Shown one piece after another: positions 17,948-55,827 of a stretch of 58,046 bases of DNA (its first letter is position 1; each line of letters starts with the position of its first letter). The notes under the pieces are model-generated. The model did no database searches. It was not told the DNA's origin and worked only from the letters and a program-made list of their open reading frames with translations. A program made the translations under genes and the position numbers. Source of the stretch: Octopus bimaculoides (taxonomy: Eukaryota); contig NC_068985.1 in assembly GCF_001194135.2 (NCBI RefSeq), forward strand, positions 36,582,305 through 36,640,350, in the 5' to 3' direction.

Positions 17948-17953
17948 TTTATT
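17948..17953 (-). terminator. Candidate poly(A) signal of U2AF1 (AATAAA; a second copy at 17891..17896)
   Basis: TTTATT on + strand 70 nt beyond the U2AF1 stop. Confidence 0.55.
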
Positions 17954-18022
17954 GACTTCTGAATGAAAATGATGAAAATAGAAAAACATTTTACAGTTGC
18001 ATGGCTATGGTGCATGATAAAG

Positions 18023-18203
18023 TTAAAAACGTCCACTTCGGCCTTCTCTCTCTCTAGAACGAGATCGCCTTTGATTCCTTTCTCGGCTTCTTGAACGGGA
18101 TCGTCTCCTTTCTCGGCTACGACTTCTATTGCCACGACGTGGTTGCTCTTGGCTCCGGCTGCGACTCCTGCTGCGGCGTGTTGGAGGTGAACGGGATCTT
18201 GAC
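18023..18203 (-). CDS. U2AF1: U2AF1 exon 8, RS domain and stop (181 nt)
   Basis: gtttcccacag|GTCAAGATCC...TTTTAA; [17 protein letters not shown]...REGRSGRF*; within ORF 18023..18223. Confidence 0.96.
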
Positions 18204-28465: not shown

Positions 28466-28515
<50 letters not shown>

Positions 28516-30625: not shown

Positions 30626-30676
<51 letters not shown>

Positions 30677-33600: not shown

Positions 33601-36600
33601 GTAGATGGAAGACTGTATGGAAGCCCATATAAATGTCTATCTTTTGTGTTTGTCCCTCTGACTGCTTGACAACCAGTTACAACCCCATTGGCAAAAGAAG
33701 CAGATAGAGTTAGGAAAGAAAAGAAAAATTTAAAAAAAAAGAAGTACTAGTGTCTATTTGTTTGACTAAACTCTTTGAGGCAGCATCCTTGCATGGCCAG
33801 TTCAATAATGACTAAAACCAGTAAAAGATGAAAGATAACCTAACAATAAAGAACATTGCAAACCTAAGTTTTAAAAGCATTCAAATGTTTAATATTTATT
33901 TCTTCTATAAACATAAAGTTAATAATTGAAAAGGGATTATATATTCAGACAAAATGATGCCAGAGTATTTCAGGTGCTTATTTTAACCTTCAGATCCAGA
34001 ACAAAGAGAAACAGCATTAAATGCTGTAAGTTATCTAATTTGATACCACACTGTTTCTGCCAAATTGCAGTCAGTATATTTTAAACATTACCATATGAAA
34101 TCAGTTTATGATTAATTATTCATGTTTTAATGTCTGTTAATTAGAACCATGTGGAGAGCCAACCATAATAATTGTGGTAATATATTGCAGAATAAAGGCG
34201 GCAAGCTGGTAGAAACGTTAGCATGTCGGGCCATCTTTATGTTCTGAGTTCAAATTCCACCGAGGTCAACATTGCTTTTCATCCTTTCGAGGTTGATAAA
34301 CGAAGTACCAGTTGCATACTAGAGTCATCTAATCACCCCCACCTCACCCCGAAAAAAAAAAAAAAGAAATTCAGGCCTTGCATCTAGAGCAGAGAAGAAT
34401 CTATTGCAGAATAGCCTAAAGTAACTGTCAGGTGGAACAAAGAATTTACAGTGTCACTCACAGTTAATCACAACATAAGGTTCACACACAGACACCAACA
34501 AAATTTACAGAAAATTGAATAAGCTAAATAAAATAAAAAGACATAGGTGTGACTGTGTGGTAAAAGTTTGCTTCCCAAGCACATGGTTCTAAGTTCAGTC
34601 CCACTGCATGACAAAAAGGGCAAGTGTCTTCTTTGATAGCCTTGGGTCAACAAAGACTTTGAGTGACTGAAAGACAACCAAATATATGTGAGTGTTTACG
34701 TCCCCGTAATTTAGCAGTTCAGCAAAAGAGACTGGATAGGATAAGCATTAGGCTTAACCTTTTCGATACTGACCCGGCCGTAGCTGGCTGAAAAATTTTT
34801 TGGTTCATAAGACCAACCCAGCCGTAGCAAGCCGAGAGTACCCATTGTTATTGAAATGTGAATTTAAGCACAAATCTTCTTAGTACATTTGTGAAAATGT
34901 GTGATTTCACTTTGTAAATAGTTGAGTTATAGTATCCATTTGAAAATGGATAGGAGTTACATGCTATCAAGCAGTGATTCCAAATTTAAGGGTTTTTCAA
35001 CGGAAAATATGGAGATATCGAGAAAAAGAATGAATGAGGTACAAAAGCACATGGTGTACGAGAATGAATAGGATATTTTTGTATCCGAAACCAAAAGCAG
35101 CAATAGTGACATCAAAGACGATTTTACATTGGAATAAAGTACAAACTTTAAAAATGTTTTTATTAGCAATTTTTCTGAGATGGGGTCTATCCATAGTCTT
35201 TCTTAGGAAGCAAAACCGTTAGACTTTTTGAAGAGATCACTGCGGAAACAAACAGTATTTGCCAGAAAAGCCCATGAAATGGGGGAATCTAAGTTTGGAA
35301 AATTTGTGAAGCAAATACTGGGTACTGCTGTGGATTTAGTTTTTATACAGGGAAAATAATGTTAGTCAGCTTGGGTACAATGTGGTCTGGAATTTATCAC
35401 TTCCATACCATAACCAGGGCTGTATATTATTTTTTGACTGATTTTTTTTTAGTTCGATGAAACTTGCAGTGGATTTCAGTATTTCAGTTTATTTCACCTT
35501 TATGGGTCACCTGTTCTGTTGTGCATTAAATTTCAACTGATAATCTAGTGATGTGCACAATTCTTCTGTATCAAAATTTAGTTGCATACCCAATTGAATA
35601 TTAGCTGAGGATTCATTTTCAATGGTGATGTTTAAACAAAATTTTAATAATTTTACCTTGTGCTCAGTTTATCTGGATTTACCTGTAATTAGAGTCACTT
35701 TGAGATAAAAGTTATGCAATAGAATTGATTAAGTACCCATTCTTTAATTATGTTCCAAATATCACATATGTTGATAAGTAAAAAAAGTTTCAGTTGCTTA
35801 ATGAAACTAGTCTAAATTCATGATGATTTTAGAATTTAATTGAAACTCATGAGGGGTGTATTTTGGTCAGAAATATAGTAACGAAAGGGTTAAGAAAAAA
35901 AAACTGGGGTTGATTCATTCAACTGACAATGTTTCAAAATGATGTTCATATTGAAATAGTGCAACAGCTTGAGTAGGTTGAAAAAAAATGAGAAAATAGC
36001 AAAATTTACATACCTGACTGAAAGTGGGTTTGTTGTGCAGGCGAGAACATCTTTCTCCATGTCTACAAGCTCCAATTTTGAAGTAAAAGGAACAATTAAC
36101 CCTTGAAAGGAAATTAAACACAAGTAAATTCACTGAAAACGAAATCATATGCCAAATAAAGGAAAGTAAAACAGCTTTCAAATTAGCATAAAAAATAATG
36201 ATTACCACTGAAATTTCTTTTGTGAACATTAAAATCATTCACTACCATTAACATATCTTTACTAAAATTGTATACATGTTAGCACTATGAAAAACAAAAC
36301 AGTTTCATAGCATGATTAAGAAATCATACAATATAGGAACTGCACTCGGCCACAAGAAAATGGTATGTCATTTGGAGTACAACAATGTTATTAAGTGGAG
36401 TCATGGTTTCAGAATAAAGCCATTAAGATTTTATACCAGTGTAATAAGAATGGCTAAAAAGAATGTCAGCTTTTATTTCATGAATGCAAAAAGGGAAAAA
36501 CAATCCTTAATTATAAAACAGTAGCCAATAAGATGGATTGTACATGGAATTCAAAAAGGTATAGCCTTTTCACATAGTTTCATGTAAATTCAACTTGGGA

Positions 36601-39129
36601 ATTATGGCATATATGTCTGTGGGATGCTCAGCTATTTGTATCTAACAAATGAATCCCCATTGGCAAACAACAGAAATTCACCACTGCTCCTGTACACTGT
36701 AACCGTGATGGACTAAGTAGCCTTCTGACCGGGGAGAATGTTGGCCAGCAGGATGGCATCATTTGAGAGCTAAAACAATGCAAAGCACATATGACCAGTG
36801 ACATATAAACGACACCCAAGAGTTTGGTTAATACTGTATTTAGAGGTCACACTAAAGTAAGAGCAATAATAAATCTGAAGTGAAGAGTACGTGGATTTAA
36901 ATGGCAAAAAAGGAAGACCATCCAGAAATATAACAATATCTAGGAGAGTATTGTAGCTCGCTTGAAGCATTGTCTGTTTCAACACACGATTTCACATCGG
37001 GAATATTGTATTATCTATAAAACAAATTCATAAAAATAAAAAAAAATTGGGGAGGAGAGGAAGTCTTTCCCTCTATACTTCTGCCGAGTACAAATTTATT
37101 CTTATACAAGAATGTTGTTGACAGTAACTTTGAAGAGTTGGCTAGCTAAGCCATTGTCACAGATTTCGAAGAATAACAGATAATGAATGATATCAATCAA
37201 AATAATGGCTCACCTTTCTGAAACGAGCTTTCAGAGTAATTTCCCGCAGTAATATGACAAAGTGAAATTAAAGTGTTCATTCATATCGTGTGTGCAAATA
37301 AATACACGCTTTACTTGTGGCAATAATGCCGTTTGTTTTTAAAAAATCCATTATTTTCTCTGGAGCAAGCTGCTTCAATATTTCCTCAAATGAACACTTT
37401 AATTTCACTTTGTCATACCACTGCGGGAAATTACTCTGAAAGAAATCTTTTCCGAAATGCGAATAGATTGATTACATATTTCTTTCATTATATGATTGCA
37501 GTTTTGTGAGATTTGGCTGTTATTTCTAGCATGTGAATAGCCTGCTTGAAGGCCAAGGCCGTAGAATCGGGGGGGAGAGGAGCAATTGAAATTTTGAAAA
37601 ATTTTGGTAAATTTTCAAATTANNNNNNNNNNNNNNNNNNNNNNNNNNNNNNNNNNNNNNNNNNNNNNNNNNNNNNNNNNNNNNNNNNNNNNNNNNNNNN
37701 NNNNNNNNNNNNNNNNNNNNNNNNNNNNNNNNNNNNNNNNNNNNNNNNNNNNNNNNNNNNNNNNNNNNNNNNNNNNNNNNNNNNNNNNNNNNNNNNNNNN
37801 NNNNNNNNNNNNNNNNNNNNNNNNNNNNNNNNNNNNNNNNNNNNNNNNNNNNNNNNNNNNNNNNNNNNNNNNNNNNNNNNNNNNNNNNNNNNNNNNNNNN
37901 NNNNNNNNNNNNNNNNNNNNNNNNNNNNNNNNNNNNNNNNNNNNNNNNNNNNNNNNNNNNNNNNNNNNNNNNNNNNNNNNNNNNNNNNNNNNNNNNNNNN
38001 NNNNNNNNNNNNNNNNNNNNNNNNNNNNNNNNNNNNNNNNNNNNNNNNNNNNNNNNNNNNNNNNNNNNNNNNNNNNNNNNNNNNNNNTTTTTTTTCATAT
38101 TCGTTTTCCACACACTTGTTAACCCCCCCCTCTCCCCAGGGTGGCTTATTATTATTATTATTTTTTGTTTCCGGGTGAAAGCCTTTATATTGACCATCTA
38201 TTTCTGCCAGCCGAATGAATAAAATAGCATTTAACATTTTTATTCTTGCAAGTGGTGCCCTAGATATTACCTCATAAAAATCCAAAATTTACACTGCGCC
38301 ATCCCACAAATATATAAATATACTGCATTTTAGGTTGTTTGGAAAATATTCTTCTAGAATAGATATTTAGTAAATCAAAAATAATCTAGGGTTTTGTTGT
38401 TATTATTATTAAAGCGGCGAGCTGGCAGAATTGTTAACACACCAGGCAAAATGCATAGCATTTCGTCTACACACACACATATATGAAAGCTAATCGCAAT
38501 TAATTCAAATATCTAATACTAATAAATTTTTAACTTAGTAACAAAATCATTTCCCCCTATCTCCCTCTAAACTTAGCAAGCTACTGTGACGAACATTGAA
38601 AATAACTTGTAATTAAATTATCATAATTTATGTCATTTCATTTCATTCCTTATCACTTTAATCCTATACGAATGTCGCTATGTTCCTTGTGACTGACTGA
38701 AAAGAAGTCAATATTAACCGACATAATTTATTCACATTATCATCGATTATTTTCATGAAATGACTTTAACACATGAAAAACTAATATTTAAAAAAATAAA
38801 ACGTAATGCTTTTAATTAAAGGATTCCATACAACATAAAGGGAATCATCTTCATTCAATATTTATAACAAAGAGATTTTTTTTTCCCGTGAAAATATTTC
38901 TCGACAGAATATCAAATAAATCTGATAAATGGAAGCGGTAAACTGTTACACAGCATACGACGAAAGAAATATGAACAAAGCTCCTTCCATATAAGTCAAT
39001 AACAAATAGAGAGTGGTATAAATAACAGAAAGATACATAAGAATAAACATATGAGATATAAAATAAATTTGTATAAATGAATTACTTGTCCTTTTCTGTG
39101 CCAAAAATTGATGCAAGATACTCAGCCAT
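18023..39129 (-). CDS. U2AF1: Splicing factor U2AF small subunit (U2AF35): complement(join 39129..39086, 36101..36014, 33048..32982, [optional 32735..32730], 25398..25322 OR 24522..24449, 20573..20502, 18611..18478, 18393..18295, 18203..18023); 252-255 aa depending on isoform
   Basis: The spliced product reads [44 protein letters not shown]...[35 protein letters not shown]...[55 protein letters not shown]...RS domain...RSGRF*. It has two CCCH fingers, a UHM and an RS tail. All junctions are GT-AG and in frame. Confidence 0.97.
18295..18393 (-). CDS. U2AF1: U2AF1 exon 7 (99 nt), ZnF2 end
   Basis: tcttttcag|AGAGTGCACT...CGAAA|gtaagt; [32 protein letters not shown]. Confidence 0.96.
18478..18611 (-). 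CDS. U2AF1: U2AF1 exon 6 (134 nt)
   Basis: catttcatttcag|TTTCGTTAT...ATGGG|gtaagg; [44 protein letters not shown]. Confidence 0.96.
20502..20573 (-). CDS. U2AF1: U2AF1 exon 5 (72 nt)
   Basis: cccttttttatag|TATGGTGAA...GTTAAG|gtaagc; [24 protein letters not shown]. Confidence 0.96.
24449..24522 (-). CDS. U2AF1: U2AF1 alternative exon 4b (74 nt, phase 1 to 0), paralog of 4a
   Basis: ctctgttttcgtttag|TCCAAATGGGA...GAAAAG|gtaacc; [24 protein letters not shown]. Confidence 0.9.
25322..25398 (-). CDS. U2AF1: U2AF1 alternative exon 4a (77 nt, phase 1 to 0)
   Basis: ttcttttcag|TGACAATGGAC...GACAAG|gtaacc; [25 protein letters not shown]. Confidence 0.92.
29880..30250 (-). mobile_element. Pogo/Tigger-like transposase remnant (CENP-B/Tc5 HTH region)
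   Basis: Frameshifted translation [63 protein letters not shown] resembles the pogo N-terminus ending in FKASxGWxxxF. Confidence 0.65.
32730..32735 (-). CDS. U2AF1: Predicted 6-nt in-frame U2AF1 microexon (TTCCTG)
   Basis: Minus strand gtgattttttttttgtttgcag|TTCCTG|gtaagtc; near-consensus acceptor and donor only 6 nt apart; frame-preserving (GSH-IPV-TM / GSH-IPV-QM). Confidence 0.7.
32982..33048 (-). CDS. U2AF1: U2AF1 exon 3 (67 nt)
   Basis: ttcttcatatag|ACAGTACTG...TCTCATA|gtaagt; [22 protein letters not shown]. Confidence 0.95.
33480..33830 (+). mobile_element. Older diverged copy of the same SINE family
   Basis: Degenerate head and tail matching 43822..44460. Confidence 0.7.
34758..35889 (+). 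mobile_element. Internally deleted piggyBac-family DNA transposon (1132 bp) with TTAA TSDs
   Basis: TTAA at 34754..57 and 35890..93; termini CCTTTTCGATACTG / CCCTTTCGTTACTA (11/14); remnant [55 protein letters not shown] at ~35250..35470. Confidence 0.88.
36014..36101 (-). CDS. U2AF1: U2AF1 exon 2 (88 nt), ZnF1
   Basis: cctttcaag|GGTTAATTGT...AGTCAG|gtatgt; [29 protein letters not shown]. Confidence 0.96.
37228..37442. repeat. Near-perfect inverted repeat, 54-bp arms, 107-nt spacer (U2AF1 intron 1)
   Basis: 37228..37281 vs reverse complement of 37389..37442 match 52/54. Confidence 0.92.
39086..39129 (-). CDS. U2AF1: U2AF1 exon 1 coding part (44 nt)
   Basis: aagATGGCTGAGTATCTTGCATCAATTTTTGGCACAGAAAAGGACAA|gtaatt = [14 protein letters not shown](K). 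Confidence 0.96.
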
Positions 39130-40000
39130 CTTTCCAACGTCTTCAGATTAGCTGAATTGTATTATGGGAAAATATTTTGACAATTTTTTTGTTATGTCTT
39201 TTCTCAAACAAACATTTTACTTTAATATAAACGGGATTAAATTTAGAATCAAAAGTCAGATAAAGAATAATTTTCTAAAACATACTTTTATGAAATAAAT
39301 ATCATCGGCTGAACCCGTAAATTAATGTTGATTAGCAAAGGGAGATAATCCGCTAGCTTTTAGTAACAATTTTATGTTAATTAAAAAAAAGTCATTTACG
39401 AACGATGTCACTTCAAGATCGTTAGATTAATTACTTTGATATATTACTACTTTTTGATTAAATCCTGATGCTGTTAACCTTGCCTTGCTTTGCCTTCATT
39501 CGGGCGCAATAAATAATTTTAGTACTATAGTGAGTTTGTGATAACGTTTTCATATTTCGGCAAAAAAATTTCATCGAACTTACTTTAACTACTATTAACC
39601 CTTGAACGGCGGGAAAGGGTTGCATGAATGTGTGTGCTAAACGGGCAAAAAAGAAAAATAAATAAAAGAATATTTTAATCAAAATTTAAAAAGTATTTAT
39701 TTTCACTTTAAAAGAGTACAAAAGCTATAATTATTAATCTCTTGTACAATAAAATTTACAATCTCCATATCGAAAAGTGCCTTAAAATATTCAATTTCTT
39801 TTGGTGATTGCTGTATCCATGTACAATTTTTGAAACATTCGCCGTGCTAGGGTTAAGAAGAGCCAGAAGAGAGCTAAATAGGATCTCGCTAAATAAAATA
39901 CTTTCGGTAATATACCAATTGGATTGACATAGTGGCAAGGTCTTCATATTTTTGTGAGGAATCGAGAACAGCTTTCTCCAAACGTGCACCTACTGCCTTT
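39130..40000. promoter_or_regulatory. Probable U2AF1 promoter, possibly bidirectional toward PEN-2
   Basis: Immediately upstream of the U2AF1 ATG; CpG dinucleotides look locally enriched (cgggcgc, cggcggg, cggctgaacccg) compared with the CpG-poor introns. Judged by eye only. Confidence 0.4.
39599..39852. mobile_element. TTAA-flanked MITE (piggyBac-type), 254 bp
   Basis: TTAA both sides; TIR CCCTTGAACGGCG / CCCTAGCACGGCG (11/13). Confidence 0.7.
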
Positions 40001-40194
40001 AAGAAAAAAAACATGAAGAGAAAAATTTAGTAACTTCAATTCGCACAAACAAATTTTATCTTCGATGTCACAGGTCTGGTAATAATACAACAAAATCCCT
40101 CAAATCTCTACGAATGCAATGACATGCAATATCTGAAGATTTCTTATAGCGACCTCACGCACTCACCCACATCCATATGCTTAACTACAAAGTA

Positions 40195-41300
40195 TATTTG
40201 TCACCCTCGACTTCAGCAAAACTTTCGATGTATGGCATGCGAATCTCTTATCTAAATCAATGAGCCCTATCCGTCTCTCATCTCTCGGATCAGTAGCATC
40301 TCTATCATATCGCAATACTGTCGCATGTGTTTTTTACGTTTCAAGTTTAAATTCCGTCGAGGTCACCTTGGCCTTTCATCCTTTCAGGGTTGAGCACTGG
40401 GTTCATGTAATCGACTTACTCCCGCCCACTAAATTACTGGTCTTGTTCCAAAATGTGAAACCAATATCACCGTATGGTATCTCCCTCATTCTATCAATTC
40501 TGGTGTGTCCCTGAATTTTATACCCACTATATTCTCTCTATACATTAATGATCTTCTGCACGCCCTACAACACTCACTCTTGCAAAGATGACAATACTTC
40601 ATCCCTCCCTAACATTCTCCAACTATACATCACCTCACGCTTGCAACCAAGGAAAATTCACGCCAAACTCACAACGACACTTTGAACAGAGATCTCGAAA
40701 GCAACCCTCCAGTGAGGATACAGCAATCTTGTCTTTTTCAACAAGAAAATACAAACGCTAGTCGTATTAAGAGAGCATCATTACACCACATCCTCTCAGT
40801 CATGAGTAACACTCAAATAGAACTTTCGAAGACTACTTGAATGTTTCTTATGACTGAGACCCAACAGTTAGGTGTCTCATTACCATTGGGGGGTCTCTTT
40901 TGTTAAAACCACTCCTTAACAGCGCAGAAGATACTTCAATCCCCAAACAGCAGTCAATATGCGACAAAGTTGATATTAGGCCTACAATAGATTCCTGCAC
41001 TCACATGCACACATCCTTGACCATATCTAGAAAAGGGTCACCCGACTGACTGGCATAAAATCACTTAGAAACACACTCCTATCACTAGGTCACAGGCGCT
41101 CTTACCATCGTTCTTTCTGTTTTTCTACCTTTACTACTCTCCTGAGTTGGGTGGGATCCACTCCAGCACTCTCATTCTACTCGTCATTTTCCCTCTCATC
41201 ACCCTTGTTATGTCTAATCCCCATCTCACGCACTAAACACAAGGTTCAGTCTTTCTTTCCAGAACGTCGGTCTTTCTGGATCCTTTCCAGCAGGTGTTGT
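40195..41300 (+). mobile_element. Decayed non-LTR retrotransposon RT (Jockey/CR1-like), interrupted by a SINE at ~40345..40460
   Basis: Translated fragments VTLDFSKTFDVWHANLLSK, INSGV, IFSLYINDLL and DDNT correspond to RT motifs LDxSKAFD / VPQG / LFxLYINDL / ADD. Confidence 0.7.
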
Positions 41301-43360
41301 CTTACTTGAGTTCAAGAGAAACGATAACGACATTTTTTATGTTGTGACTTTATTTCCATTTAGCAAAATTTATAACATAAAGGCATTATATAAAGGAGTC
41401 CATGATATGAAACCTCGACTATGTAATGTTATTTCCTTCCCTTTTTCTTTTACGTGATACTCATACCGTTGTATTATAATTTATTGTTCAGGAATGGCAA
41501 GCATACTTGACACACACCAAACAATCCCTTTCTTAATTTCCCTCTACTAAGAAATAAGCACAGCGAATAAGATACACAGAAAAAAAAACAAACAAAAAAA
41601 AAACGATAAGCTCAAGAATTAAAATGGATTATAATAGATTTGACAGCTACACTTGTGTTCTCTTGCAACTTTTGTTTCCTCGGAACTTCCAAAAAATGCC
41701 CATTTCCTAAAACAATTTTGCCGAGATAAGGGTGTAGATAATGATTATGTGAATAAAATGTAGGAAAAGAGAAAATTTTCATTATTGAACCATTCTTTCC
41801 CCCCAGCATTCGTCAATTAATTTCCGTAACTAGCATTTTTCAGTTTTTAATTTATTTTTTTCAGATATATATGGTTAAAACATACGTTCCCTTTACTTTA
41901 AAAAAATTCATTTGAGAATGTTTTTAAAGAGAGTTACGAGGAAACAAAGTCGAAAGTGGGTGAGAATGATCCCTAATCAACAGCGTCGAAAACATATTTC
42001 TGCAAATTTTCATTAAAAAAATTATGCATTTTTGAGAAAGATATGAAGAAACAAAGTCAGGAGATTAGGGGCACCAAACTATAGTTACGGCACACATTAG
42101 TGATAGTCATGACTATCATAGGTAACTAAAATTATTGATAACTATCGATAAAGAAAATATCAAACTGACACTAACAAGTACATTCGAGAGACAAAGCATT
42201 CCGCAGTAAATAAAGTATAAAAATCGAAATTTCCATAAATATTAACTTCATACAAAATATATATTTATACATTTATATATTTATGATAATAATAGTTCAC
42301 TTTATTTTTCTTGTTTTTCACTTGTTAAGTTGTGCAGAAGAAAATTATGTGCAATTCTAATAAAGTTACTTCCTGTTGTAAGTGTGTGTCATTAATTTAA
42401 AGGGAGTGACGTGACTCCCTACTCAATATTATCGCTAAAACCAAGTACGTACATATTTATTCTATATTATTAATTACTGTTTCAAAGTACATATAATTTT
42501 CTTTGTAATGATGAAGTTTTCCTTCTAAATTTTTAACTGCGACTAATATGAAAACAAAGCTCAAATAATACTGTCGTTTATTTTTTTCTATTCAAGAAAA
42601 AACTCATTGAATTTTAATTTTATTCCTTTTCAGTAATAGGTTGAACAGTAGATATATTTAATCTTTATAAACAGGGCTTAGCCATAAGTCAGTCCTAATT
42701 GTCTCCTTAGTAGTATCTTGGATTCCATTAATCAGCGTGTCCTTTAAAACATCAGGATGTTAATTCAAAGAGATTTGGCTGCCATTTCTAGCAGCTGGAA
42801 CGGTCATGTAGAGACTACCTACTTAACTCATATAAACAGTTTTTTTGTGCTCTACAGGGAATTACACTGGAGCAATGGAAACATGGGTTCAATTCCCCAT
42901 TAAGTTCTCACTTTTTATCAACCAAAAACAAAACAAAACAGAAACGAAAATCAGGCTATTGAAAAAATACGAAAATGTCAACTCAGTTTTATTTTTTCAA
43001 ATGTTATCTTACCTAAAGTTGTGCCTTGTTTTCAGAAACCTAAGATTCTTTTAACATTTCAGTTATAAACTTTTTAATATCGAGTTAATGAGCCTCTACG
43101 CGGCCTTTCAATTTGCTAGAATTAACTGCCAATTATTCCTCATATTACACGTTTACCGACTTCAAAACAATACATTGAACAGTGTAGTTTTGGACAAATA
43201 AAATCACGGTATTTGTCGTGGGTTGAATGTTTTGATTATTAGGTTTGCACGATCAAGATTGCTTTTGTTGCACAACTTGACAGGTACCAGTTACGATTGA
43301 CATACAGTTATTTTTATAAAAATATTTTGGTAATCTTCAAGTTTAGGGGGATAAAAAAAA

Positions 43361-43976
43361 TTTTGTCCACGTTTTCTTGTAATGTCCTGTACCCAGATAT
43401 GCATCTATATATACATAGGTATGTACATATGTATGCATATACTCACATATTATTTGTGAGTATATGCATACATCTCTGTTTATAAATAAATCATTCACGT
43501 GATTTGATTGACGTTAGAGTTAGGATGTGATTTATTTATAAACAGCTAGAAGAAAAGGATAATACTGATAAGCCGTTCAGTTATTTCCCTTGAATATTTT
43601 TATTTATTTTTTTTATTCCCCTAAACTTGAAGATTACCAAAATTTTTTATCATTGTTTTTATTTACATTCTCTGCTTTATCATTCCATGATGATAATGTA
43701 GAAAAAGAAAACATAACAATGGAAAAAAAATTCGGCATATCTACACAAGTGTGCCCCCCATCCGACTTTGTTTCCCTTATAACTTTCCTATAAATGGATA
43801 GTTTTTAATGAAATTTTCTACGAGTGGCTGTGTGGTAAATAGCTTGCTCACGAACCACATGGTTCCGGGTTCAGTTCCACTGCGTGGCACCTTGAGCAAG
43901 TGTCTTCTACTATAGCCTCGGGTCAACCAAAGCCTTGTGAGTGGATTTGGTTGACGGAGACAAAAAGAAGCCCGTC

Positions 43977-44034
<58 letters not shown>

Positions 44035-44138
44035 CAAATAATATGTGAGTATATGCATACATATGTACATACCTACATCTACATGTATATATAGATGCAT
44101 ATCTGGGTACAGGACATTACAAGAAAACGTGGACAAAA
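43361..44138. repeat. Inverted repeat with ~97-bp arms (43361..43457 and 44034..44138)
   Basis: Arms identical apart from one 8-nt indel. Confidence 0.88.
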
Positions 44139-44460
44139 TGAAAAACAGAACATAAACAGAGCACAGAAAACACACAGGCCACATAGAGAACATTTCCTTT
44201 ATCAGCTGTCACCATTCTAAAATTAAGCGTTTCGAAGAGTTAGGGCACATATATATATGTGTGTGTGTCTGTGTTTGTCCCTCCAACATCGCTTGACAAC
44301 CGATGCTGGTGTGTTTACGGTTCGGGAAAAGAGACCGATAGAATAAGTACTAATAAGTACTTGGCTTACGAAGAATAAGTCATGGGGTCGATTTGCTTGA
44401 CTAAAGGTGGTGCTCCAGCATGGCCACAATCAAATGACTGAAACAAGTAAAAGAGTAAAT
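43822..44460 (+). mobile_element. tRNA-derived SINE (same family) with an unrelated ~200-bp insert at ~44031..44235
   Basis: Head gagtggctgtgtggtaaatagcttgc..., (TA)n middle, tail ggtgctccagcatggccacaatcaaatgactgaaacaagtaaaagag. Confidence 0.85.
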
Positions 44461-45230
44461 ACCTTTCAGGTTGTTTAAATTACGACTGTATTTGAATCTG
44501 ATGTAAGAAGAGAAAAGAAAAAAAATTAGTGGGCGCACACACATAATTTTTTTTCAAGTTTCATTTAGTAGATATTTGTTATGTATGTCAGTATGTATGG
44601 GTGCACACCCACCAAATTTATTAGCATTGAATTCCAATATGATCGGAATCTACACTATCTAACAGGTATTTGTGGCTGTATGGTAAAAAAAACTTTATTC
44701 CCAGCCCTATGGTTACTAGTTCAGTCTCACTGTATGACACCTTGTGCAAGTGTCTTTTGACCCAAACCTTGTGAGTGGATTTGGTAGATGGATACTGAAA
44801 GAAGTCTGCTATGGATATATATATAATAATATCACTTAAACGACTCCGTCAGTCATGATTGATCATGAGTGCACCTAAGGGGTTCTCTTCCGGGGTACAA
44901 GTCTGGATGGAAAGTCGCCTCACCAGTGAACGCAGAACCTAGGGTAGTTTTCATGGAAGACCAGTAGTCGCCCATACATACCAGCCTCCCCTCTTCATGC
45001 TACCGATGTTATCCAAGTGACGTCGCAACTCCTTTCTAAAGCTGTGTGAACTGGAACAACGTGAAATAAAGTGTCTTGCTCAAGAACACAACATGCGGCC
45101 TGGTCCAGGAATTGAACTCACAACCTCACGATTGTAAGCTTGACGCTCTAACCACTGAGCCATGTTCCTTCATATATATATATTCATATATGTGGTGAAG
45201 CAACTGTTGCTGATCCCTTAATTATATATA

Positions 45231-45270
<40 letters not shown>

Positions 45271-46746
45271 NNNNNNNNNNNNNNNNNNNNNNNNNNNNNN
45301 NNNNNNNNNNNNNNNNNNNNNNNNNNNNNNNNNNNNNNNNNNNNNNNNNNNNNNNNNNNNNNNNNNNNNNNNNNNNNNNNNNNNNNNNNNNNNNNNNNNN
45401 NNNNNNNNNNNNNNNNNNNNNNNNNNNNNNNNNNNNNNNNNNNNNNNNNNNNNNNNNNNNNNNNNNNNNNNNNNNNNNNNNNNNNNNNNNNNNNNNNNNN
45501 NNNNNNNNNNNNNNNNNNNNNNNNNNNNNNNNNNNNNNNNNNNNNNNNNNNNNNNNNNNNNNNNNNNNNNNNNNNNNNNNNNNNNNNNNNNNNNNNNNNN
45601 NNNNNNNNNNNNNNNNNNNNNNNNNNNNNNNNNNNNNNNNNNNNNNNNNNNNNNNNNNNNNNNNNNNNNNNNNNNNNNNNNNNNNNNNNNNNNNNNNNNN
45701 NNNNNNNNNNNNNNNNNNNNNNNNNNNNNNNNNNNNNNNNNNNNNNNNNNNNNNNNNNNNNNNNNNNNNNNNNNNNNNNNNNNNNNNNNNNNNNNNNNNN
45801 NNNNNNNNNNNNNNNNNNNNNNNNNNNNNNNNNNNNNNNNNNNNNNNNNNNNNNNNNNNNNNNNNNNNNNNNNNNNNNNNNNNNNNNNNNNNNNNNNNNN
45901 NNNNNNNNNNNNNNNNNNNNNNNNNNNNNNNNNNNNNNNNNNNNNNNNNNNNNNNNNNNNNNNNNNNNNNNNNNNNNNNNNNNNNNNNNNNNNNNNNNNN
46001 NNNNNNNNNNNNNNNNNNNNNNNNNNNNNNNNNNNNNNNNNNNNNNNNNNNNNNNNNNNNNNNNNNNNNNNNNNNNNNNNNNNNNNNNNNNNNNNNNNNN
46101 NNNNNNNNNNNNNNNNNNNNNNNNNNNNNNNNNNNGTTAAACGATGATGATGATGATGATGATATATATATATATATATGTAGGAATATCTTTGTGTGTG
46201 TCTTTCTGTTTGTGTCCCCCCACCACCACTTGACAACCAGTGTTGGTGTGTTTGCCTTCTTGTAACTTAGTGGTTCAGGAAAAGAGACCAATAGAATAAG
46301 TACCAGGCTTAAAAAATAAGTACTGGGGTCGATTCATTTGACTAAAATTTCAAGTTAGTGCCTCAGGGTGGCCACAGTCTTATGACTGAAACAAGTAGAA
46401 AAAAAACCCCCCAGTATTTGTTTGTAAGTTACTAAGTTGTTAGTGGGGTGTGGGAGTACCCTTGTGTAGGTATGCCAAAAATTCAGTATACTATTTAGTA
46501 TACTATTCAGTATACTATAAAGATAAGTACCTCTTTGTCTTAGTCTCTGGGAAGATCAGTGTATCCCTTTGTAGCCCCAAAATGTCCATCTAAAGGTGTA
46601 CTCTTATATATTATGAGTTTGATGTTGCTTTACTTCTGTCCTAGTCAGTCCTGATTGATTTATGGTCAAACGCTATCCATATGTAACTATTCTCTCTAAT
46701 TGTATTTTTAGGCGATAGACTTAATCTGCCTCTCTGTTGCCTTTAA

Positions 46747-46963
46747 CTCTTTATCATTTAAACTGACCACATCTGACCCAACTATTGTACTTGTTTTATG
46801 TTCAAACTGGACAGGTCTAACCTTTCAACACCACTCCAGTGTCATTCTACAAATAAACAATCACATCATTGAATCTCAAAGCTACAAGATAATGCATGAT
46901 TAGTTCAAAACAATATGGATAAATAAACATTACATTTGACAATGTAATCTGATTGCTAAAAGG
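46747..46963 (+). mobile_element. MITE-like dispersed repeat; a truncated second copy lies inverted at ~12050..12230
   Basis: Shared ttttatgttcaaactgg...gataatgcatgatt...aataaataa.cattac..ttga between the two loci; starts after TTAA. Confidence 0.65.
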
Positions 46964-47132
46964 TTAGCAGAATCCAATTTGTTGTGAGCATTTGAGCCTG
47001 GATTCTGGCCTAAGAATAAACCTTTCTCCTATCAGTTTTGTGATCTTGAAAGGATCTGGGTGTTTACCTTTCATTCTCTGACTGTGTTATTAAACCAAAA
47101 ACAAACTGAAGTGCCTTTTTAGATTGCTAATT

Positions 47133-47165
<33 letters not shown>

Positions 47166-47273
47166 TGCGCACGCATGCTCACATTTGCAAACACTTCTAC
47201 AATATAATATGTATGTGAATATTTTGGCTTATATTGAAAACTATTGACGTATATTTAAAATTATCTTCTAGAC

Positions 47274-50200
47274 ATGGATCTCCGAAGAGTGAAAGATGAT
47301 GTCAAGTTAGATTTATGCCGGACATATTACAAAGGTAATGTTAATGGAGAAGAAACAGGGTGTATGAATAAAATAGATAATGTAACTAGCAGATAATAAG
47401 CAATTAAAGAAGAAACCACGAAGATAATGAGGCATAACAGTTGTCAGTTAATCCCCATGTCAGGTCTGTTCAAAGTTGTTTCAGCTGTGACTAATATGTC
47501 ATTTTGTATGTGAATGTCTACACTGTCAAGTATCTCCTTCCTTTTGAAAAGTGAGAGAAATATGGTTACTATAACTAGCAGGTTAAGTGATCATATAGAA
47601 GCTTTTGAAGTTTTGACTGGAAGGGTATCCAAGTATAAGAGTCTCTTGCTTTACAAGACAAAGTGTCCAGATTTATGAAAACTAATCCATTCACGTGACA
47701 CGTGTGTAAATAGAGAGATCTACAAAGAGTTATACTTGAGGCATTTTTGAACCTGTAAGAAGGCCATTCACTAGATTTTGCCCTGGAGAGAAATTCTTGT
47801 AGACAAAAAGGTGTAATTTAGGTAGAAAATAATGAATGAGTGTGGTAGCAGTGAAATAATGATTTTGAAAATAGACACTTTGATGACAGCAATATTTTAT
47901 TATAGTGTTTATTGTCTTTCAGGTGGTTTTGCACTCCTGCCATTCTTATGGTTTATTAACTTCCTGTGGTTCTTCAGAGAAGCTTACCGCCGGCCAGAGT
48001 TTGAACAACAGAAACAAATCCGTACATGTAAGCAGCTATTTCGATTTGCTTTCTTCACTTCATTACTGAGTTGATATGTCTTCATGTATTTTTCTTTGAA
48101 ATAACAGAATCAATGAGGACTTATAATGATTGAAAATTAGAATAGTGATTATGTTAACAATAATAGTGATAAGTAATAGTTTCAACTATCATTTTAAACA
48201 TAAACCATCATCACCATTTAACATCTGTTTTCCATGCTGGCATTGGTTGGGCAGTTTAACAGGAGCTGGTGAGCTAATGGACTGCATGAAGCTTCAGTGT
48301 CTGCTCTGGTACAGTATCTATGGCTGGATGCCCTTGCTAATGCCAACCATTTTATAGGGTGTACTGGGTGCTTTTTACATAACCTTGGCACTAGTGATGT
48401 CACCGAGTAACTCACAAGACCTCTCAACTGAGTGGAGGGAGTGATACTATGCCAAGTGGTGAGAAGTTAGAGTATGATAAAGGGGCAAGAACAGGTCTCT
48501 TAGTGGTACTTGGAGATCCATCTACTTTCATCTCAAATACCCAAATATATATGCACATAACACGTATAAATTACTCAGCATTAACAAAATATCTCTGTTG
48601 CAAATGACTCACACTGAGTTACTAGTTTAATATTGCTTATTCTCAAGTTATTGGCCTACAGGAATAAGAGTCACTGGAACCATTTAGCTGACACTAATTC
48701 TTTTGACAACTTGCATAAAACTGTAACTGGTTCTGAAGCAAAGCCTATTTTTAAAGCATTCATATCTAAATTAAATACTTTGAAGATTATTGCTTGTTCT
48801 CTTTTTTTTTTTACTTTATTTTTCACTATTTCACAATAATTCTTCCATGTTCACATAGATGGGATGGTTTTAGTTTTTCTTGGTGCAGTTAACAGCTGGT
48901 TGCTTTTCTTACTACCAACCACTTTATCATTAACCTTTAGGAGACGGCAGGGCTGATCTATTGGCCAAAAAGTTGAATAACGAAGAAGATTGCATTTGTT
49001 CAATTTCATACAAGAATATATATAGTTTTATATATGTAAATGGATTACTTTATTTTTTTAATAATTTTTTTTGAAAAATAAGTGCATGCCCTCTGTAGGG
49101 CTTGTGAAAAGGGCTGTATCTTCTTGGCACTGAGACTCCAGATGAGGCTCCATCTCCAAAGGGTTAAATAGGTGTGGAACCTGTTAGAAAACTAACAGTG
49201 TTTAGGCATTGAAGTTGAAGGTGTGATGAGTTTAGGCAAACTATCATGGGATTTTAATCTTTTTTTTACCATATTTCTAATGAAATGCACTGCTTTGTGT
49301 GTTTCACTTAATATGGTAAATAATGAAGTTGTTGAAATTGAGTAAAGTAACTTTTTCCTTTCAAGATTATGAATGAAATATTTAGTTTAGATATGAATGC
49401 TTTGAAAACAGGTTTTGTTTCAGGACTGGTTACAGTTTTATGCAAGTTGTCAAAAGGATTAGTATCAGCTAGTAGCTCCAGTGACTCATACTCTTGTAGG
49501 CCTATAACTTGAGAATAAGCAATCAAATGTCCAGGCTGTTTTACAGCCATAATATTGTATTCCTGATTCTTCTTTTTTTTTCTGAAGAACAAAGCTTCTT
49601 TTGTAAAAGGAAGGAACTAACTTGATCTCAATATAATATTGTTACCTATTTTAAATTGTAAATGGTAGTATATCGGTAATAAAAAATGCTGTAACAGTAA
49701 ATCTACTTGGCTCAGTTTATCTGGTTAACACCAGATTTCACCTCTAGCTGAAGTGTGTAAGGCTATCCAGCTGTAAAAACTATTGCTGAATGTGCTTCTT
49801 CAAGTTCACCATCCCCCAGACAACATATTATACAGTCTGTTAAGTGTATGTAAATTTACTAGGTCTTATTGTGAATATTATACTGGAGTAATAAGATCTT
49901 CCTTGGCTGTATTAAGAAATGTGCTTTTCAACTACATGGTTTCAATCCTACTGCATGGCATCTTGGACCAGTGTCTTCTACCATTACTTCAGAATGTTCA
50001 AAACCTTTTGTTTGAAATTTAGTAGATGAAGCCATATGGAAGCCCACCAGAAGGATCATTTCTATTTTTGATTGGTAAACATAATTTGTCATTTGTTTTA
50101 GCACCACCACCTGGCCTTTGGAAACCTTTAACTGTGACCATAGTGGTTGCTGCAAGTTTTCAGACTAGATCTCTGGTTTGAGGATAACTTCCTCTCTTTC

Positions 50201-51216
50201 TCCTACCAGTTTCAGAGGCCCTGAAGAGAACCATTGGTGCTGCACTTCCTCCTCTGACCAAACAGAAAATAAGAAGCCTGGCTGTTGTCTGATTCATTAG
50301 TTTCAAATATCTTTGTATATTTACTTTATTTGATGGCATAAAAGATGCATGAGCATATTAGACACCCCAATTTCAGCAGTGCATCATCATCAACATCATT
50401 TAACATCCATTTTTCCAGTGCTGGCATGGGTTGGACAGTTTGATAGGTGGCTAACTGAAAAGCTGCACTAGGCCCCAATTGTCTGTTTTTGGTATGGCTT
50501 CTACAAGTGGATGACCTTCCTAATGCCAACCTTTTACAGAGTATACTGGGTGCTTTTTATGTGGTGCTAGCATAGGTACTTTTTCATGTGGCACTGGCAT
50601 GGGTGATTTTTACCTGGTGCCAGCATGGATGCTTTATACATGGCACCAGCATGAGTGGTTTGTACTGCCTTTTATGTGGTGCCAGTGTGGGTGTTTTGTA
50701 CGTGCTCTGTATGTGGTACTGGCACAGGTACTTTTTACATGGCACCATTCAAGGAAAAATGGTTTTAGTGCATTAAAACTTAAAAGAAGCCCAACTGCAC
50801 ATAGGACCAGAGGTGATTTCTTTTGAAACAGTCTTTTGAAGACAAGTGCATCTTACATGCCATCAAATACAGTATGTTTAGATTTGTATCTAAAGATTAG
50901 GATTGAGCTTTTCTCTGTCCTCTTTACACTTTTGGATATACTTTCTTAATTGACAAAAATGAAAGTACAGATTAAGGAAAGTTCCTAATTAAAAAGGAGT
51001 TGTGCTTATTGAAATTTAACTGCTAAGGTGGAAAAATTTACTTATTTGTTTCTTCTCTTTTTCTTTTTCTTTTCAGATGTTACTCGTTCATTGATTGGGT
51101 CTTTGATCTGGTTCAGCATCATGATTATATGGATTATAATTTTTCAGATGAAACGAGCTGAATGGGGAGCTGTGGCTGATTACATGTCTTTCATCATTCC
51201 TACAGGCAGAGCATAA
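47274..51216 (+). CDS. PSENEN: Gamma-secretase subunit PEN-2, join(47274..47334,47923..48027,51077..51216), 101 aa
   Basis: [101 protein letters not shown]. Exons are 61/105/140 nt with GT-AG junctions, and the PEN-2 [10 protein letters not shown] and C-terminal DYxSFxIPxG motifs are present. An acceptor (ttcttctag) 2 nt before the ATG implies an upstream non-coding exon. Confidence 0.96.
48633..49522. repeat. Diverged inverted repeat with ~145-bp arms in PEN-2 intron (48633..48778 and 49377..49522)
   Basis: ORF-track translations of both arms share [31 protein letters not shown] on opposite strands. Confidence 0.85.
48934..49163. mobile_element. TTAA-flanked MITE (piggyBac-type), 230 bp
   Basis: TTAA both sides; TIR CCTTTAGGAGACGG / CCCTTTGGAGATGG (11/14). 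Confidence 0.7.
50385..50745 (-). mobile_element. RTE-family 3' tail with degenerate 26-bp minisatellite (PEN-2 intron)
   Basis: Same tail and ttttatgtggtgc.agcatggg repeats as 11145..11770. Confidence 0.75.
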
Positions 51217-55617: not shown

Positions 55618-55648
<31 letters not shown>

Positions 55649-55827
55649 GTTTGTGTGTCTGTGTTTGTCCCCCCAACATCGCTTGAAAACCGATGCTGGG
55701 TTATTCGGCAAAAGAGACCGATAGCATAAGTTCTAGGCTTACAAAGAATAAGTGCTGGGGGCGATTTGCTAGACTAAATGCGGTGCTGCAGCATGGCCGC
55801 ACTCAAATGACTGAAACAAATAAAAGA
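55467..55827 (+). mobile_element. tRNA-derived SINE (same family), directly after the RTE tail
   Basis: aggtgcaggagtggctgtgtgctaagtagcttgc...atgactgaaacaaataaaag. Confidence 0.85.

What the first reader, a model, noticed from the sequence alone, without database searches (positions are those of the whole stretch)
39086..47334. Head-to-head U2AF35-PEN-2 pair mirrors human U2AF1L4-PSENEN; ETHE1 neighbour is also on human 19q13
Seen: U2AF1 starts at 39129 (-) and PEN-2 at 47274 (+), divergently with no gene found between them. The PEN-2 ATG exon has an acceptor, so its non-coding first exon lies closer to U2AF1. Established: human U2AF1L4 (a U2AF1 paralog) and PSENEN are divergent neighbours sharing a bidirectional promoter at 19q13.12, human PSENEN has a non-coding first exon, and ETHE1 is at 19q13.31. 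Inference: this is an ancient bilaterian microsyntenic unit that survived the extensive genome rearrangement of coleoids, implying the vertebrate U2AF1L4 locus retains the ancestral neighbourhood and that co-regulation may be constrained.
Basis: partly seen in the sequence, partly recalled or inferred. Interest (0 to 1): 0.7.

Follow-up and report, generated by a model that had tools for sequence, protein, structure and literature searches.

The report
Ancient U2AF1–PEN-2 head-to-head gene pair
In the octopus genome the splicing-factor gene U2AF1 and the gamma-secretase gene PEN-2 sit head to head exactly as U2AF1L4 and PSENEN do in mammals, and the same neighbourhood turns up in abalone, a whelk, a mussel, an annelid, a ribbon worm, acorn worms and (in a different orientation) a coral, so it is an inherited gene pair more than half a billion years old rather than a coincidence.

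Summary
The window is Octopus bimaculoides chromosome CM046605.1. U2AF1 starts at 39129 (-) and PEN-2 at 47274 (+). They are 8,145 bp apart, with no gene, tRNA or Rfam RNA between them.

The core interpretation holds. The same head-to-head pair was read directly in two Haliotis assemblies, the nemertean Lineus (788 bp), the hemichordate Ptychodera and echidna, where the partner is U2AF1L4. Immediate adjacency is also indicated in Capitella, Nucella, Sinanodonta and Saccoglossus. In the coral Pocillopora the genes are adjacent but in tandem. The pair is missing locally in zebrafish, a shark, Owenia, Antedon and Mercenaria.

A shared promoter in octopus is not shown. The spacer is inflated by SINE-like and microsatellite repeats. 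It also holds the 865-N gap, which lies in non-coding DNA bounded by (TA)n. CpG depletion typical of gene bodies starts abruptly on the PEN-2 side of the gap. That suggests the PEN-2 leader exon lies in or near the gap, about 5-6 kb from U2AF1. The two proposed donor hexamers are at chance level, and the ETHE1 argument is weak.

This is a new, well-supported member of a known class: conserved ancestral microsyntenic pairs. Side finding: molluscan U2AF1 carries a duplicated exon 4 whose two copies appear mutually exclusive.

The parts
39086..39129 (-). U2AF1 (U2AF35) coding exon 1; ATG at 39129, donor GTAATT after 39086
18023..39129 (-). Whole U2AF1 coding span. Exons: 39129-39086, 36101-36014, 33048-32982, 25398-25322 (4a) or 24522-24449 (4b), 20573-20502, 18611-18478, 18393-18295, 18203-18023 (includes the stop).
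   Evidence: All junctions are AG/GT and the ORF is open. Pfam zf-CCCH/RRM_1. NCBI model of 252 aa.
39130..47273 (.). Spacer between the two start codons: 8,144 bp, of which 865 are N
   Evidence: No annotated gene, no tRNA, no Rfam family and no significant Pfam hit for the six spacer ORFs tested.
38001..45270 (.). CpG-undepleted domain. CpG o/e is about 1.0 at 38.0-40.0 kb and 0.5-0.9 up to the gap. It covers the U2AF1 5' end and most of the spacer and is inferred to be unmethylated promoter/intergenic DNA.
   Evidence: octopus methylation is on gene bodies, not on TEs or intergenic DNA (PMC9476566)
43316..45270 (.). Cluster of interspersed repeats. These are SINE-like copies with relatives at about 15.0-15.4 kb, 55.5-55.8 kb, 4.0-4.2 kb and 34.5 kb of the window, plus a tRNA-derived SINE-like element at 45028-45172, ending in a (TA)n run.
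45271..46135 (.). Assembly gap (865 N) in non-coding spacer; candidate hiding place of the PEN-2 leader exon and promoter
46136..47271 (+). CpG-depleted (o/e 0.14-0.35), gene-body-like DNA upstream of the PEN-2 ATG exon. It starts with (GAT)n(TA)n plus a repeat copy (46163-46403) and ends with the acceptor AG at 47270-47271. Inferred to be a 5'-UTR intron of PEN-2.
47274..47334 (+). PEN-2 coding exon 1 ([20 protein letters not shown], phase 1)
47923..48027 (+). PEN-2 coding exon 2
51077..51216 (+). PEN-2 coding exon 3 with stop codon
9132..17866 (+). ETHE1 mapped coding exons (the N-terminal exon(s) were not located). The stop is at 17864-17866, 156 bp from the U2AF1 stop on the other strand.

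Best explanation
The octopus U2AF1(-)/PEN-2(+) pair is inherited, not convergent. It is a conserved ancestral microsyntenic pair. [quoted passage not shown]

The ancestral architecture, inferred from the compact species, has three parts. One short unmethylated (CpG-normal) promoter region sits at the U2AF1 5' end. A non-coding PEN-2 leader exon lies in or beside that region. A 5'-UTR intron ends a few bases before the PEN-2 ATG. This is the layout of a bidirectional promoter, as shown experimentally for human PSENEN/U2AF1L4.

After the vertebrate duplication of U2AF1, the copy that stayed beside PSENEN became U2AF1L4 (tetrapods). The canonical U2AF1 sits in a different neighbourhood, next to CBS.

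In octopus the spacer has been inflated to 8.1 kb by SINE-like and microsatellite insertions. The PEN-2 leader exon most likely lies in or next to the assembly gap (45.3-46.1 kb). On that reading the two promoters are now probably about 5-6 kb apart rather than shared.

What is shown: gene identities, gene order, orientation and cross-phylum conservation. What is inferred: the bidirectional promoter in invertebrates, selection for co-regulation, and the position of the octopus PEN-2 TSS.
For: Gene models and identity.

Head-to-head loci, read as DNA and annotation, with ATG-to-ATG distances:
- Octopus 8,145 bp
- Haliotis 4,303 and 2,332 bp
- Lineus 788 bp
- Ptychodera 2,281 bp
- echidna 2,566 bp, with KMT2B, LIN37 and HSPB6 around it
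U2AF1 exons were confirmed by tblastn in each locus.

Further adjacency:
- Coral Pocillopora: PEN-2(+) followed 1.5 kb later by U2AF1(+).
- Capitella ELU01671/ELU01672 on one 200-kb scaffold; Nucella KAL8572026/27; Sinanodonta locus tags _025353/_025354; Saccoglossus both on a 21,236-bp scaffold.

Chance: the probability of two given genes being neighbours is about 2/20,000 per genome, and the pair is seen in six phyla.

Vertebrate history:
- The echidna partner carries U2AF1L4-type residues.
- Proteins named U2AF 26 kDa occur in mammals, turtles, caecilians and frogs.
- A percomorph U2AF1-CBS fused model (P0220) indicates that the U2AF1-CBS linkage is shared by fish and human.

Leader exon and intron:
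- A candidate acceptor lies within about 32 nt upstream of the PEN-2 ATG in all 12 species read.
- A zebrafish transcript proves a non-coding exon 1 about 420-540 bp upstream of the ATG.

CpG pattern:
- Haliotis_a, Ptychodera and Lineus each have a single CpG-normal island at the U2AF1 5' end, followed in Haliotis_a and Ptychodera by 1.3-2.8 kb of CpG-depleted DNA in front of the PEN-2 ATG.
- The two Haliotis spacers conserve only the U2AF1-proximal ~0.8 kb and the PEN-2-proximal ~0.3 kb.
- In octopus, CpG o/e steps from 0.5-0.8 left of the gap to 0.14 right of it.
- Octopus methylation marks the bodies of constitutively expressed genes and spares TEs and intergenic DNA (PMC9476566).

Human pair: a validated bidirectional promoter (Didych et al. 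2013, as cited in PMC6121907 and PMC6642334).
Against: The pair is not universal.
- No U2AF1 lies within 10 kb of PEN-2 in Mercenaria, Owenia, Antedon or the shark Heterodontus.
- In zebrafish kmt2b takes the place of U2AF1.
- In Priapulus, Lingula and Lamellibrachia the two genes are on different scaffolds.
- The orientation differs in the one cnidarian read.
Together these show the constraint is breakable.

There are no transcript, CAGE or ATAC data for octopus, so no TSS is mapped.

CpG depletion is an indirect proxy. [quoted passage not shown]

No shared transcription-factor motif or conserved spacer sequence was found between phyla.

Orientation was not read for Capitella, Nucella, Sinanodonta or Saccoglossus.
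Confidence: 0.85

Rival explanations
1. Octopus still uses one shared bidirectional promoter. On this reading the PEN-2 leader exon lies within a few hundred bp of the U2AF1 start (about 39.2-40 kb) and is spliced across a ~7-8 kb, repeat-filled 5'-UTR intron to the ATG exon.
For: The strongest CpG-normal block (o/e 0.95-1.2) is at 38.0-40.2 kb, right at the U2AF1 start. In Haliotis_a and Ptychodera the only CpG island abuts U2AF1. Octopus introns of 3-9 kb are normal in this window. TEs are unmethylated in octopus, so a TE-rich intron could stay CpG-rich. Methylation class MP3 leaves the 5' third of a gene unmethylated.
Against: CpG density stays at intergenic levels for 5 kb beyond the island and drops sharply only across the gap. 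Intronic repeat-rich stretches of ETHE1 and U2AF1 in the same window are more depleted (o/e 0.4-0.6). The candidate donors are chance-level. There is no transcript evidence.
Confidence: 0.3
2. The pair is ancient but is retained passively. A short spacer offers a tiny target for breakpoints, so the pair survives by inertia and there is no selection for co-regulation.
For: The pair was lost repeatedly: zebrafish, Owenia, Antedon, and probably Priapulus, Lingula and Lamellibrachia. The orientation was flipped in coral. The two gene functions are unrelated. The octopus spacer tolerated about 6 kb of insertions.
Against: The pair survives in six phyla, including coleoids, whose local gene order is heavily scrambled (PMC9023564). 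The 5'-5' orientation is kept in all six bilaterian loci read. Conserved pairs as a class are enriched for 5'-5' orientation, short spacers and co-expression (PMC3514665). In human, promoter mutations affect both genes.
Confidence: 0.3
3. Chance convergence: the octopus and mammalian arrangements arose independently.
For: None beyond the patchy distribution.
Against: Adjacency is seen in at least 11 species of six phyla, with the same orientation in all bilaterians read. The expected chance of adjacency is about 1e-4 per genome.
Confidence: 0.01
4. Scaffolding artefact: the 865-N gap hides a mis-join, and U2AF1 and PEN-2 are not really neighbours in octopus.
For: The gap lies between the genes. 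Its flanks are repeats and cannot be overlapped. CpG character changes across it.
Against: The order and orientation across the gap are exactly those found in ungapped loci of Haliotis, Lineus and Ptychodera, and the same adjacency is implied in Nucella and Sinanodonta. A random mis-join would not recreate that arrangement.
Confidence: 0.03

Closest known systems
Human PSENEN / U2AF1L4 bidirectional gene pair at 19q13.12 (Didych et al. 2013, Gene 515:34; cited in PMC6121907 and PMC6642334)
   Same: The same two gene families in the same 5'-5' orientation. PEN-2 has an upstream non-coding leader (acceptor just before the ATG). The echidna locus read here shows the mammalian arrangement, with KMT2B, LIN37 and HSPB6 around it.
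   Different: In octopus the partner is the single-copy U2AF1, not a paralogue. The start codons are 8.1 kb apart, against 2.6 kb in echidna and a short common promoter in human. The spacer is filled with repeats and a gap. Promoter sharing is unproven and the CpG pattern leans against it.
Conserved ancestral microsyntenic pairs (CAMPs) of Irimia et al. 2012 (PMC3514665), e.g. HSPD1-HSPE1
   Same: Two non-paralogous housekeeping-type genes, 5'-5', with short spacers in most species, conserved across phyla. The proposed cause is a shared promoter or cis-regulatory constraint.
   Different: I could not establish whether this particular pair is in their list, because the supplement is not held. 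Unlike HSPD1-HSPE1, the two products have no common pathway. The pair has also been lost in several lineages.
Metazoan microsyntenic blocks retained in coleoids (Schmidbaur et al. 2022, PMC9023564)
   Same: Ancient linkage that survived the coleoid genome reorganisation. Larger intergenic regions than in other animals are typical of such retained blocks.
   Different: This is a two-gene pair rather than a multi-gene block, and none of the searched gene names appears in the supplementary files held.

Membership tests
Conserved ancestral microsyntenic pair (CAMP, Irimia et al. 2012) | Two non-paralogous genes that are immediate neighbours | tested here: met
   No gene lies between U2AF1 and PEN-2 in octopus. 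The same holds in Haliotis, Lineus, Ptychodera and echidna.
Conserved ancestral microsyntenic pair (CAMP, Irimia et al. 2012) | Adjacency shared by several distantly related metazoan lineages | tested here: met
   Seen in Mollusca (3 classes), Annelida, Nemertea, Hemichordata, Chordata and Cnidaria. Absent locally in 5 species read.
Conserved ancestral microsyntenic pair (CAMP, Irimia et al. 2012) | Conserved relative orientation (5'-5' subclass) | tested here: met
   5'-5' in all six bilaterian loci read. Tandem in the one coral read. Not read for Capitella, Nucella, Sinanodonta or Saccoglossus.
Bidirectional-promoter gene pair | Divergent transcription | tested here: met
   U2AF1 is on the - strand and PEN-2 on the + strand, with start codons facing away from each other.
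Bidirectional-promoter gene pair | Transcription start sites less than about 1 kb apart | not testable with these tools
   No transcript or CAGE data are available. The start codons are 8,145 bp apart. CpG depletion starts only at the gap, which suggests about 5-6 kb between the TSSs in octopus. In Lineus the whole spacer is 787 bp, so the criterion is almost certainly met there.
Bidirectional-promoter gene pair | One fragment drives both genes, and the genes are co-expressed | not tested
   Shown only for human (Didych 2013). No expression data were available here.
U2AF small subunit (U2AF35/U2AF1) | zf-CCCH / UHM (RRM-like) / zf-CCCH / RS-rich tail, with the conserved N-terminus [15 protein letters not shown] | tested here: met
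   Pfam zf-CCCH E=4e-14 (2 stretches) and RRM_1 E=2e-7. The RS tail is visible in the translation.
PEN-2 (gamma-secretase subunit, PF10251) | A ~101-aa protein matching PF10251 over its full length | tested here: met
   E=7.8e-39, residues 8-99 against profile positions 2-93 of 93. 100% identical to the NCBI O. bimaculoides PEN-2.
ETHE1 (persulfide dioxygenase, metallo-beta-lactamase fold) | Lactamase_B domain with the HxHxDH motif | tested here: met
   PF00753 E=2e-17 on the mapped exons. THVHADH is visible. The N-terminal exon was not located.
Genomic regulatory block (developmental gene plus bystander) | A trans-dev target gene with conserved non-coding elements spread into the neighbouring gene | tested here: not met
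   Neither gene is a developmental regulator. There is no spacer similarity between phyla.

The most novel reading that the evidence does not exclude
The U2AF1-PEN-2 pair is a selectively maintained co-regulated unit more than 600 Myr old. A single bidirectional promoter has coupled the dosage of a core 3'-splice-site factor and a gamma-secretase/Notch-pathway subunit since before the protostome-deuterostome split. On this reading vertebrate U2AF1L4, usually treated as the derived 'like' gene, is the positional heir of the ancestral U2AF1, and canonical U2AF1 is the relocated copy. Octopus would be a natural experiment in which repeat insertion has pulled the two promoters apart.
Probability: 0.3. 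Interest if true: 0.55.

Novelty: new member of a known kind. Interest (0 to 1): 0.4.

Why it matters
It gives deep evolutionary depth to one of the few experimentally validated human bidirectional promoters. The PSENEN/U2AF1L4 arrangement is not a mammalian peculiarity. It is the relic of a pairing present in the bilaterian ancestor, with adjacency already present in the cnidarian-bilaterian ancestor.

It reassigns positional orthology among the vertebrate U2AF1 paralogues.

It offers a clean comparative series, from a 0.8-kb spacer in Lineus to 8.1 kb in octopus, plus independent losses in zebrafish and others. That series can be used to test whether conserved 5'-5' pairs are kept by shared promoters or by inertia.

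It is still one more example of a class with hundreds of members, so the conceptual gain is modest.

Tried and rejected
1. Scan of six spacers for promoter motifs typical of bidirectional promoters (NRF1, ETS/GABP, YY1, ZBED/DRE, CRE, SP1, E2F, ZNF143). Nothing was shared.
2. blastn of the octopus spacer against the other spacers. Only two hits, both at E=0.81.
3. Candidate PEN-2 leader donors. GTRAGT is at or below chance in the window, so no leader exon can be called from sequence.
4. My first impression that 40185-40511 (+) is a decayed reverse-transcriptase fragment was not supported by Pfam. Only the fragment downstream of PEN-2 (53359-53772) is RVT_1.
5. Closing the gap with the public assembly. 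The window comes from that same assembly, which has the same N run.
7. The supplements of Irimia 2012 and Simakov 2022 are not held. The Schmidbaur 2022 supplements contain none of the searched gene names. I could therefore not check whether the pair is already in a published catalogue.
8. Full-text searches for PSENEN + microsynteny found 0 papers, and U2AF1L4 + synteny found 1 irrelevant paper.
9. ETHE1 was not found in any fetched locus.
Full report
**Source and gene map**

PEN-2 assembled from the window is 100% identical to NCBI's Octopus bimaculoides PEN-2. The locus returned for it, GCA_001194135.2 chromosome CM046605.1, is base-for-base identical to window 37274-58046, N runs included.

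- ETHE1 (+): mapped exons 9132-17866.
- U2AF1 (-): nine exons from ATG 39129 to the stop at 18023-18025.
- PEN-2 (+): 47274-47334, 47923-48027 and 51077-51216.

Every junction is AG/GT and the ORFs are open. Pfam confirms zf-CCCH/RRM_1, PEN-2 (E=8e-39) and Lactamase_B.

**The observation**

39086 is the last base of U2AF1 exon 1, 39129 is its ATG, 47274 is the PEN-2 ATG and 47334 is the end of that exon. The start codons are 8,145 bp apart and face away from each other.

Nothing else is detectable between them:
- no NCBI gene
- no tRNA
- no Rfam family
- no significant Pfam hit for the spacer ORFs tested, six of the thirteen of 70 aa or more

An acceptor-like ttatcttctAG ends two bases before the PEN-2 ATG.

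**The assembly gap**

The 865-N run (45271-46135) lies in non-coding spacer, so no frame crosses it. Its left flank ends in (TA)n after a tRNA-derived SINE-like element at 45028-45172; its reverse complement shows box A- and box B-like motifs. Its right flank begins with (GAT)n(TA)n and another interspersed repeat at 46163-46403, which has relatives at 14982-15211 and 55621-55828.

The two flanks share only a 69%-identical, co-oriented repeat copy and do not overlap. The public assembly has the same gap, so continuity cannot be proven. The order and orientation across the gap are, however, exactly those of ungapped loci in other animals (next section). That makes a mis-join very unlikely.

**Is the pairing older than octopus?**

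I looked up PEN-2 homologues in their genomes with 10-kb flanks and checked each locus by tblastn.

Head-to-head U2AF1(-)/PEN-2(+), with ATG-to-ATG distance:

| Species | Distance |
|---|---|
| Haliotis, two assemblies | 4,303 and 2,332 bp |
| Lineus longissimus (nemertean) | 788 bp |
| Ptychodera flava (hemichordate) | 2,281 bp |
| Tachyglossus (echidna) | 2,566 bp |

The echidna order is KMT2B - U2AF-like(-) - PSENEN(+) - LIN37 - HSPB6.

In the coral Pocillopora verrucosa the genes are adjacent but tandem: PEN-2(+) is followed 1.5 kb later by U2AF1(+).

Without spending further look-ups, names and accessions returned by the protein searches show immediate adjacency in four more species:
- Capitella: ELU01671/ELU01672 on the same 200,737-bp scaffold
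- Nucella: KAL8572026/27
- Sinanodonta: locus tags ACJMK2_025353/_025354
- Saccoglossus: both genes on one 21,236-bp scaffold

Negatives:
- No U2AF1 lies within 10 kb in Mercenaria, Owenia, Antedon or the shark Heterodontus. In Owenia and Antedon the two genes are at least on contigs of identical length.
- In zebrafish, kmt2b(-) sits directly upstream of psenen(+) with no U2AF relic.
- In Priapulus, Lingula and Lamellibrachia the two genes are on different scaffolds.

With roughly 2/20,000 odds per genome for two given genes to be neighbours, adjacency in six phyla cannot be chance. The 5'-5' state is reconstructed for the protostome-deuterostome ancestor, and adjacency for the cnidarian-bilaterian ancestor.

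**Which vertebrate paralogue kept the ancestral neighbourhood?**

The echidna neighbour of PSENEN carries the U2AF1L4-type residues TIVLLNLYRNPQNTAQTADGSHC, HVSDVEVQEHYDSFFEEVFTELQEK and LRPIS (the comparison sequence is from memory). Its closest database relatives are named 'splicing factor U2AF 26 kDa subunit'. They occur in monotremes, marsupials, placentals, turtles, caecilians and frogs at 89-100% identity. Fish and shark entries in the list are all '35 kDa'.

A percomorph model fuses U2AF1 with cystathionine beta-synthase (P0220). This indicates that the U2AF1-CBS neighbourhood known from human 21q22.3 (established knowledge) already existed in bony fish.

By parsimony, the duplication predates the teleost-tetrapod split. 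U2AF1L4 is the copy that stayed next to PSENEN, and zebrafish lost it. The human pair and its validated common promoter are documented in the literature (Didych et al. 2013, as cited in PMC6121907 and PMC6642334).

**How it probably works**

All 12 species read have a candidate acceptor within about 32 nt upstream of the PEN-2 ATG. A zebrafish transcript proves a non-coding exon 1 about 420-540 bp upstream of the ATG, with exon 2 starting 32 nt before the ATG.

In Haliotis_a, Ptychodera and Lineus there is one CpG-normal island (o/e 0.8-1.2) over the U2AF1 5' end. In Haliotis_a and Ptychodera it is followed by 1.3-2.8 kb of CpG-depleted, gene-body-like DNA in front of the PEN-2 ATG. Between the two Haliotis species only the U2AF1-proximal ~0.8 kb and the PEN-2-proximal ~0.3 kb of the spacer are conserved.

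This is the footprint expected of one unmethylated bidirectional promoter next to U2AF1, with the PEN-2 leader spliced over a 5'-UTR intron. In Lineus the entire spacer is 787 bp. This part is inference; no TSS was mapped.

**The octopus spacer**

Gene bodies in the window are strongly CpG-depleted, with a window-wide median o/e of 0.27. This fits published octopus methylomes, in which 5mC marks the bodies of constitutively expressed genes and spares TEs and intergenic DNA (PMC9476566).

The profile across the spacer is:
- 38.0-40.2 kb: CpG-normal, o/e about 1.0
- up to the gap at 45.27 kb: o/e 0.5-0.9
- 46.136 kb onwards: an abrupt fall to 0.14-0.35

In raw counts that is 6-7 CpGs per 200 bp left of the gap against 0-2 right of it.

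The depleted stretch therefore starts 1.1-2.0 kb upstream of the PEN-2 ATG, a distance like that in Ptychodera and Haliotis. The extra ~5 kb between it and the U2AF1 island includes SINE-like and microsatellite repeats at 43.3-45.3 kb.

My reading (about 55-60%) is that repeat insertion has pushed the two promoters about 5-6 kb apart and that the PEN-2 leader exon sits in or beside the gap. The alternative (about 30%) is a leader near U2AF1 with a long, TE-rich and therefore weakly depleted intron. It cannot be excluded, because one octopus methylation class leaves the first third of a gene unmethylated.

**ETHE1**

ETHE1 converges on U2AF1, with 156 bp between the stop codons and facing AATAAA signals about 30 nt apart. 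It was not found beside U2AF1 in the 3-3.7 kb of flank available in Lineus, Ptychodera or echidna.

Its location on human 19q13 (from memory), about 8 Mb from PSENEN, is roughly a 1-in-20 coincidence on its own. A somewhat better hint of wider 19q13.12 linkage is HAUS5, which lies 6 kb from PEN-2 in the crinoid Antedon, and KMT2B beside PSENEN in echidna and zebrafish.

**Novelty**

The class is known. Conserved ancestral microsyntenic pairs are enriched for 5'-5' orientation and short spacers (PMC3514665), and coleoids retain a few hundred ancient blocks (PMC9023564). The human pair is also known.

I found no text naming the deep conservation of this pair. I could not read the Irimia or Simakov supplements. 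I therefore rate it a new member of a known kind, solidly supported and of moderate interest.

**Side finding**

Octopus U2AF1 has two tandem homologous copies of exon 4: 25398-25322 (77 nt) and 24522-24449 (74 nt). Each keeps the reading frame when included alone; including both shifts the frame.

The same two exon types (...[23 protein letters not shown] and ...[19 protein letters not shown]) occur in Mytilus, Magallana/Crassostrea and Nucella. They appear either in separate isoform models or wrongly concatenated in one model. This points to a mollusc-wide pair of mutually exclusive exons.

It affects a different exon from the vertebrate exon 3/Ab pair (PMC5224494). Lineus shows two tandem exon-3-like copies.

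Noticed in passing
window 25322-25398 (-) and 24449-24522 (-): U2AF1 has two tandem homologous copies of exon 4 (77 and 74 nt), both with AG/GT sites. Either one alone keeps the frame, and both together shift it. Both exon types are present in Mytilus, Magallana/Crassostrea and Nucella protein models. This points to a mollusc-wide pair of mutually exclusive exons, distinct from the vertebrate exon 3/Ab pair. The NCBI octopus model (252 aa) matches the 4b form in length.
   Followed up: partly
L005 7270-7344 and 7376-7444 (Lineus longissimus U2AF1): Two tandem copies of an exon-3-like segment (aa 42-66). This is reminiscent of the vertebrate exon 3/Ab duplication, but in a nemertean.
   Followed up: no
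window 17864-18025: ETHE1 (+) and U2AF1 (-) converge with only 156 bp between their stop codons. Candidate AATAAA signals at 17914-17919 (+) and 17948-17953 (-) face each other about 30 nt apart, so the 3' ends probably abut or overlap.
   Followed up: partly
window 38001-46200: Sharp compartment boundary in CpG content. Gene bodies have o/e 0.03-0.5, the U2AF1 5' end and spacer have 0.5-1.2, and the step down coincides with the assembly gap. A local CpG spike at 17.5-18.5 kb is caused by the Arg/Ser-rich last exon of U2AF1.
   Followed up: yes
window 53359-53772 (+), with further ORF fragments to 54674; also 5108-5365 (-): Reverse-transcriptase fragment (RVT_1, E=3e-11) downstream of PEN-2, probably a decayed LINE. 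A second RT-like ORF in the ETHE1 upstream region gave no Pfam hit.
   Followed up: partly
window 37623-38087, 28620-29201, 25109-25118 (and 2548-2756, 6121-6407, 11588-11597, 53240-53249): Further assembly gaps. Three lie in U2AF1 introns, and one of these (37623-38087) is in intron 1 close to the promoter. None interrupts a mapped exon.
   Followed up: no
L007 (Antedon mediterranea) 11167-20743: The crinoid PEN-2 is not next to U2AF1 but is followed by CFAP126, a JAB/MPN-domain gene and HAUS5. HAUS5 is a near neighbour of PSENEN on human 19q13.12 (from memory), which hints at wider conserved linkage.
   Followed up: no
L008 (Pocillopora verrucosa) 1-9864 (-): In the coral, PEN-2 has a different head-to-head partner: a 488-aa gene without Pfam hits that ends 137 bp from the PEN-2 ATG. 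U2AF1 lies downstream in tandem.
   Followed up: no
L013 / L014 (Danio rerio): Zebrafish psenen has kmt2b(-) as its upstream neighbour and no U2AF1-like gene or relic. A Logan transcript shows a 116-nt non-coding exon 1 at L013 9463-9578.
   Followed up: yes
L010 (Lycaon pictus) 10001-10306: An intronless, full-length 'PEN-2-like' ORF with no neighbours within 10 kb. It is a processed retrocopy of PSENEN in a canid genome.
   Followed up: no
protein P0220 (Percomorphaceae): A UniRef model named cystathionine beta-synthase carries U2AF1 zinc-finger and RRM domains plus a PALP domain. It is a read-through or fusion annotation that betrays U2AF1-CBS adjacency in fish, as on human 21q22.3.
   Followed up: no
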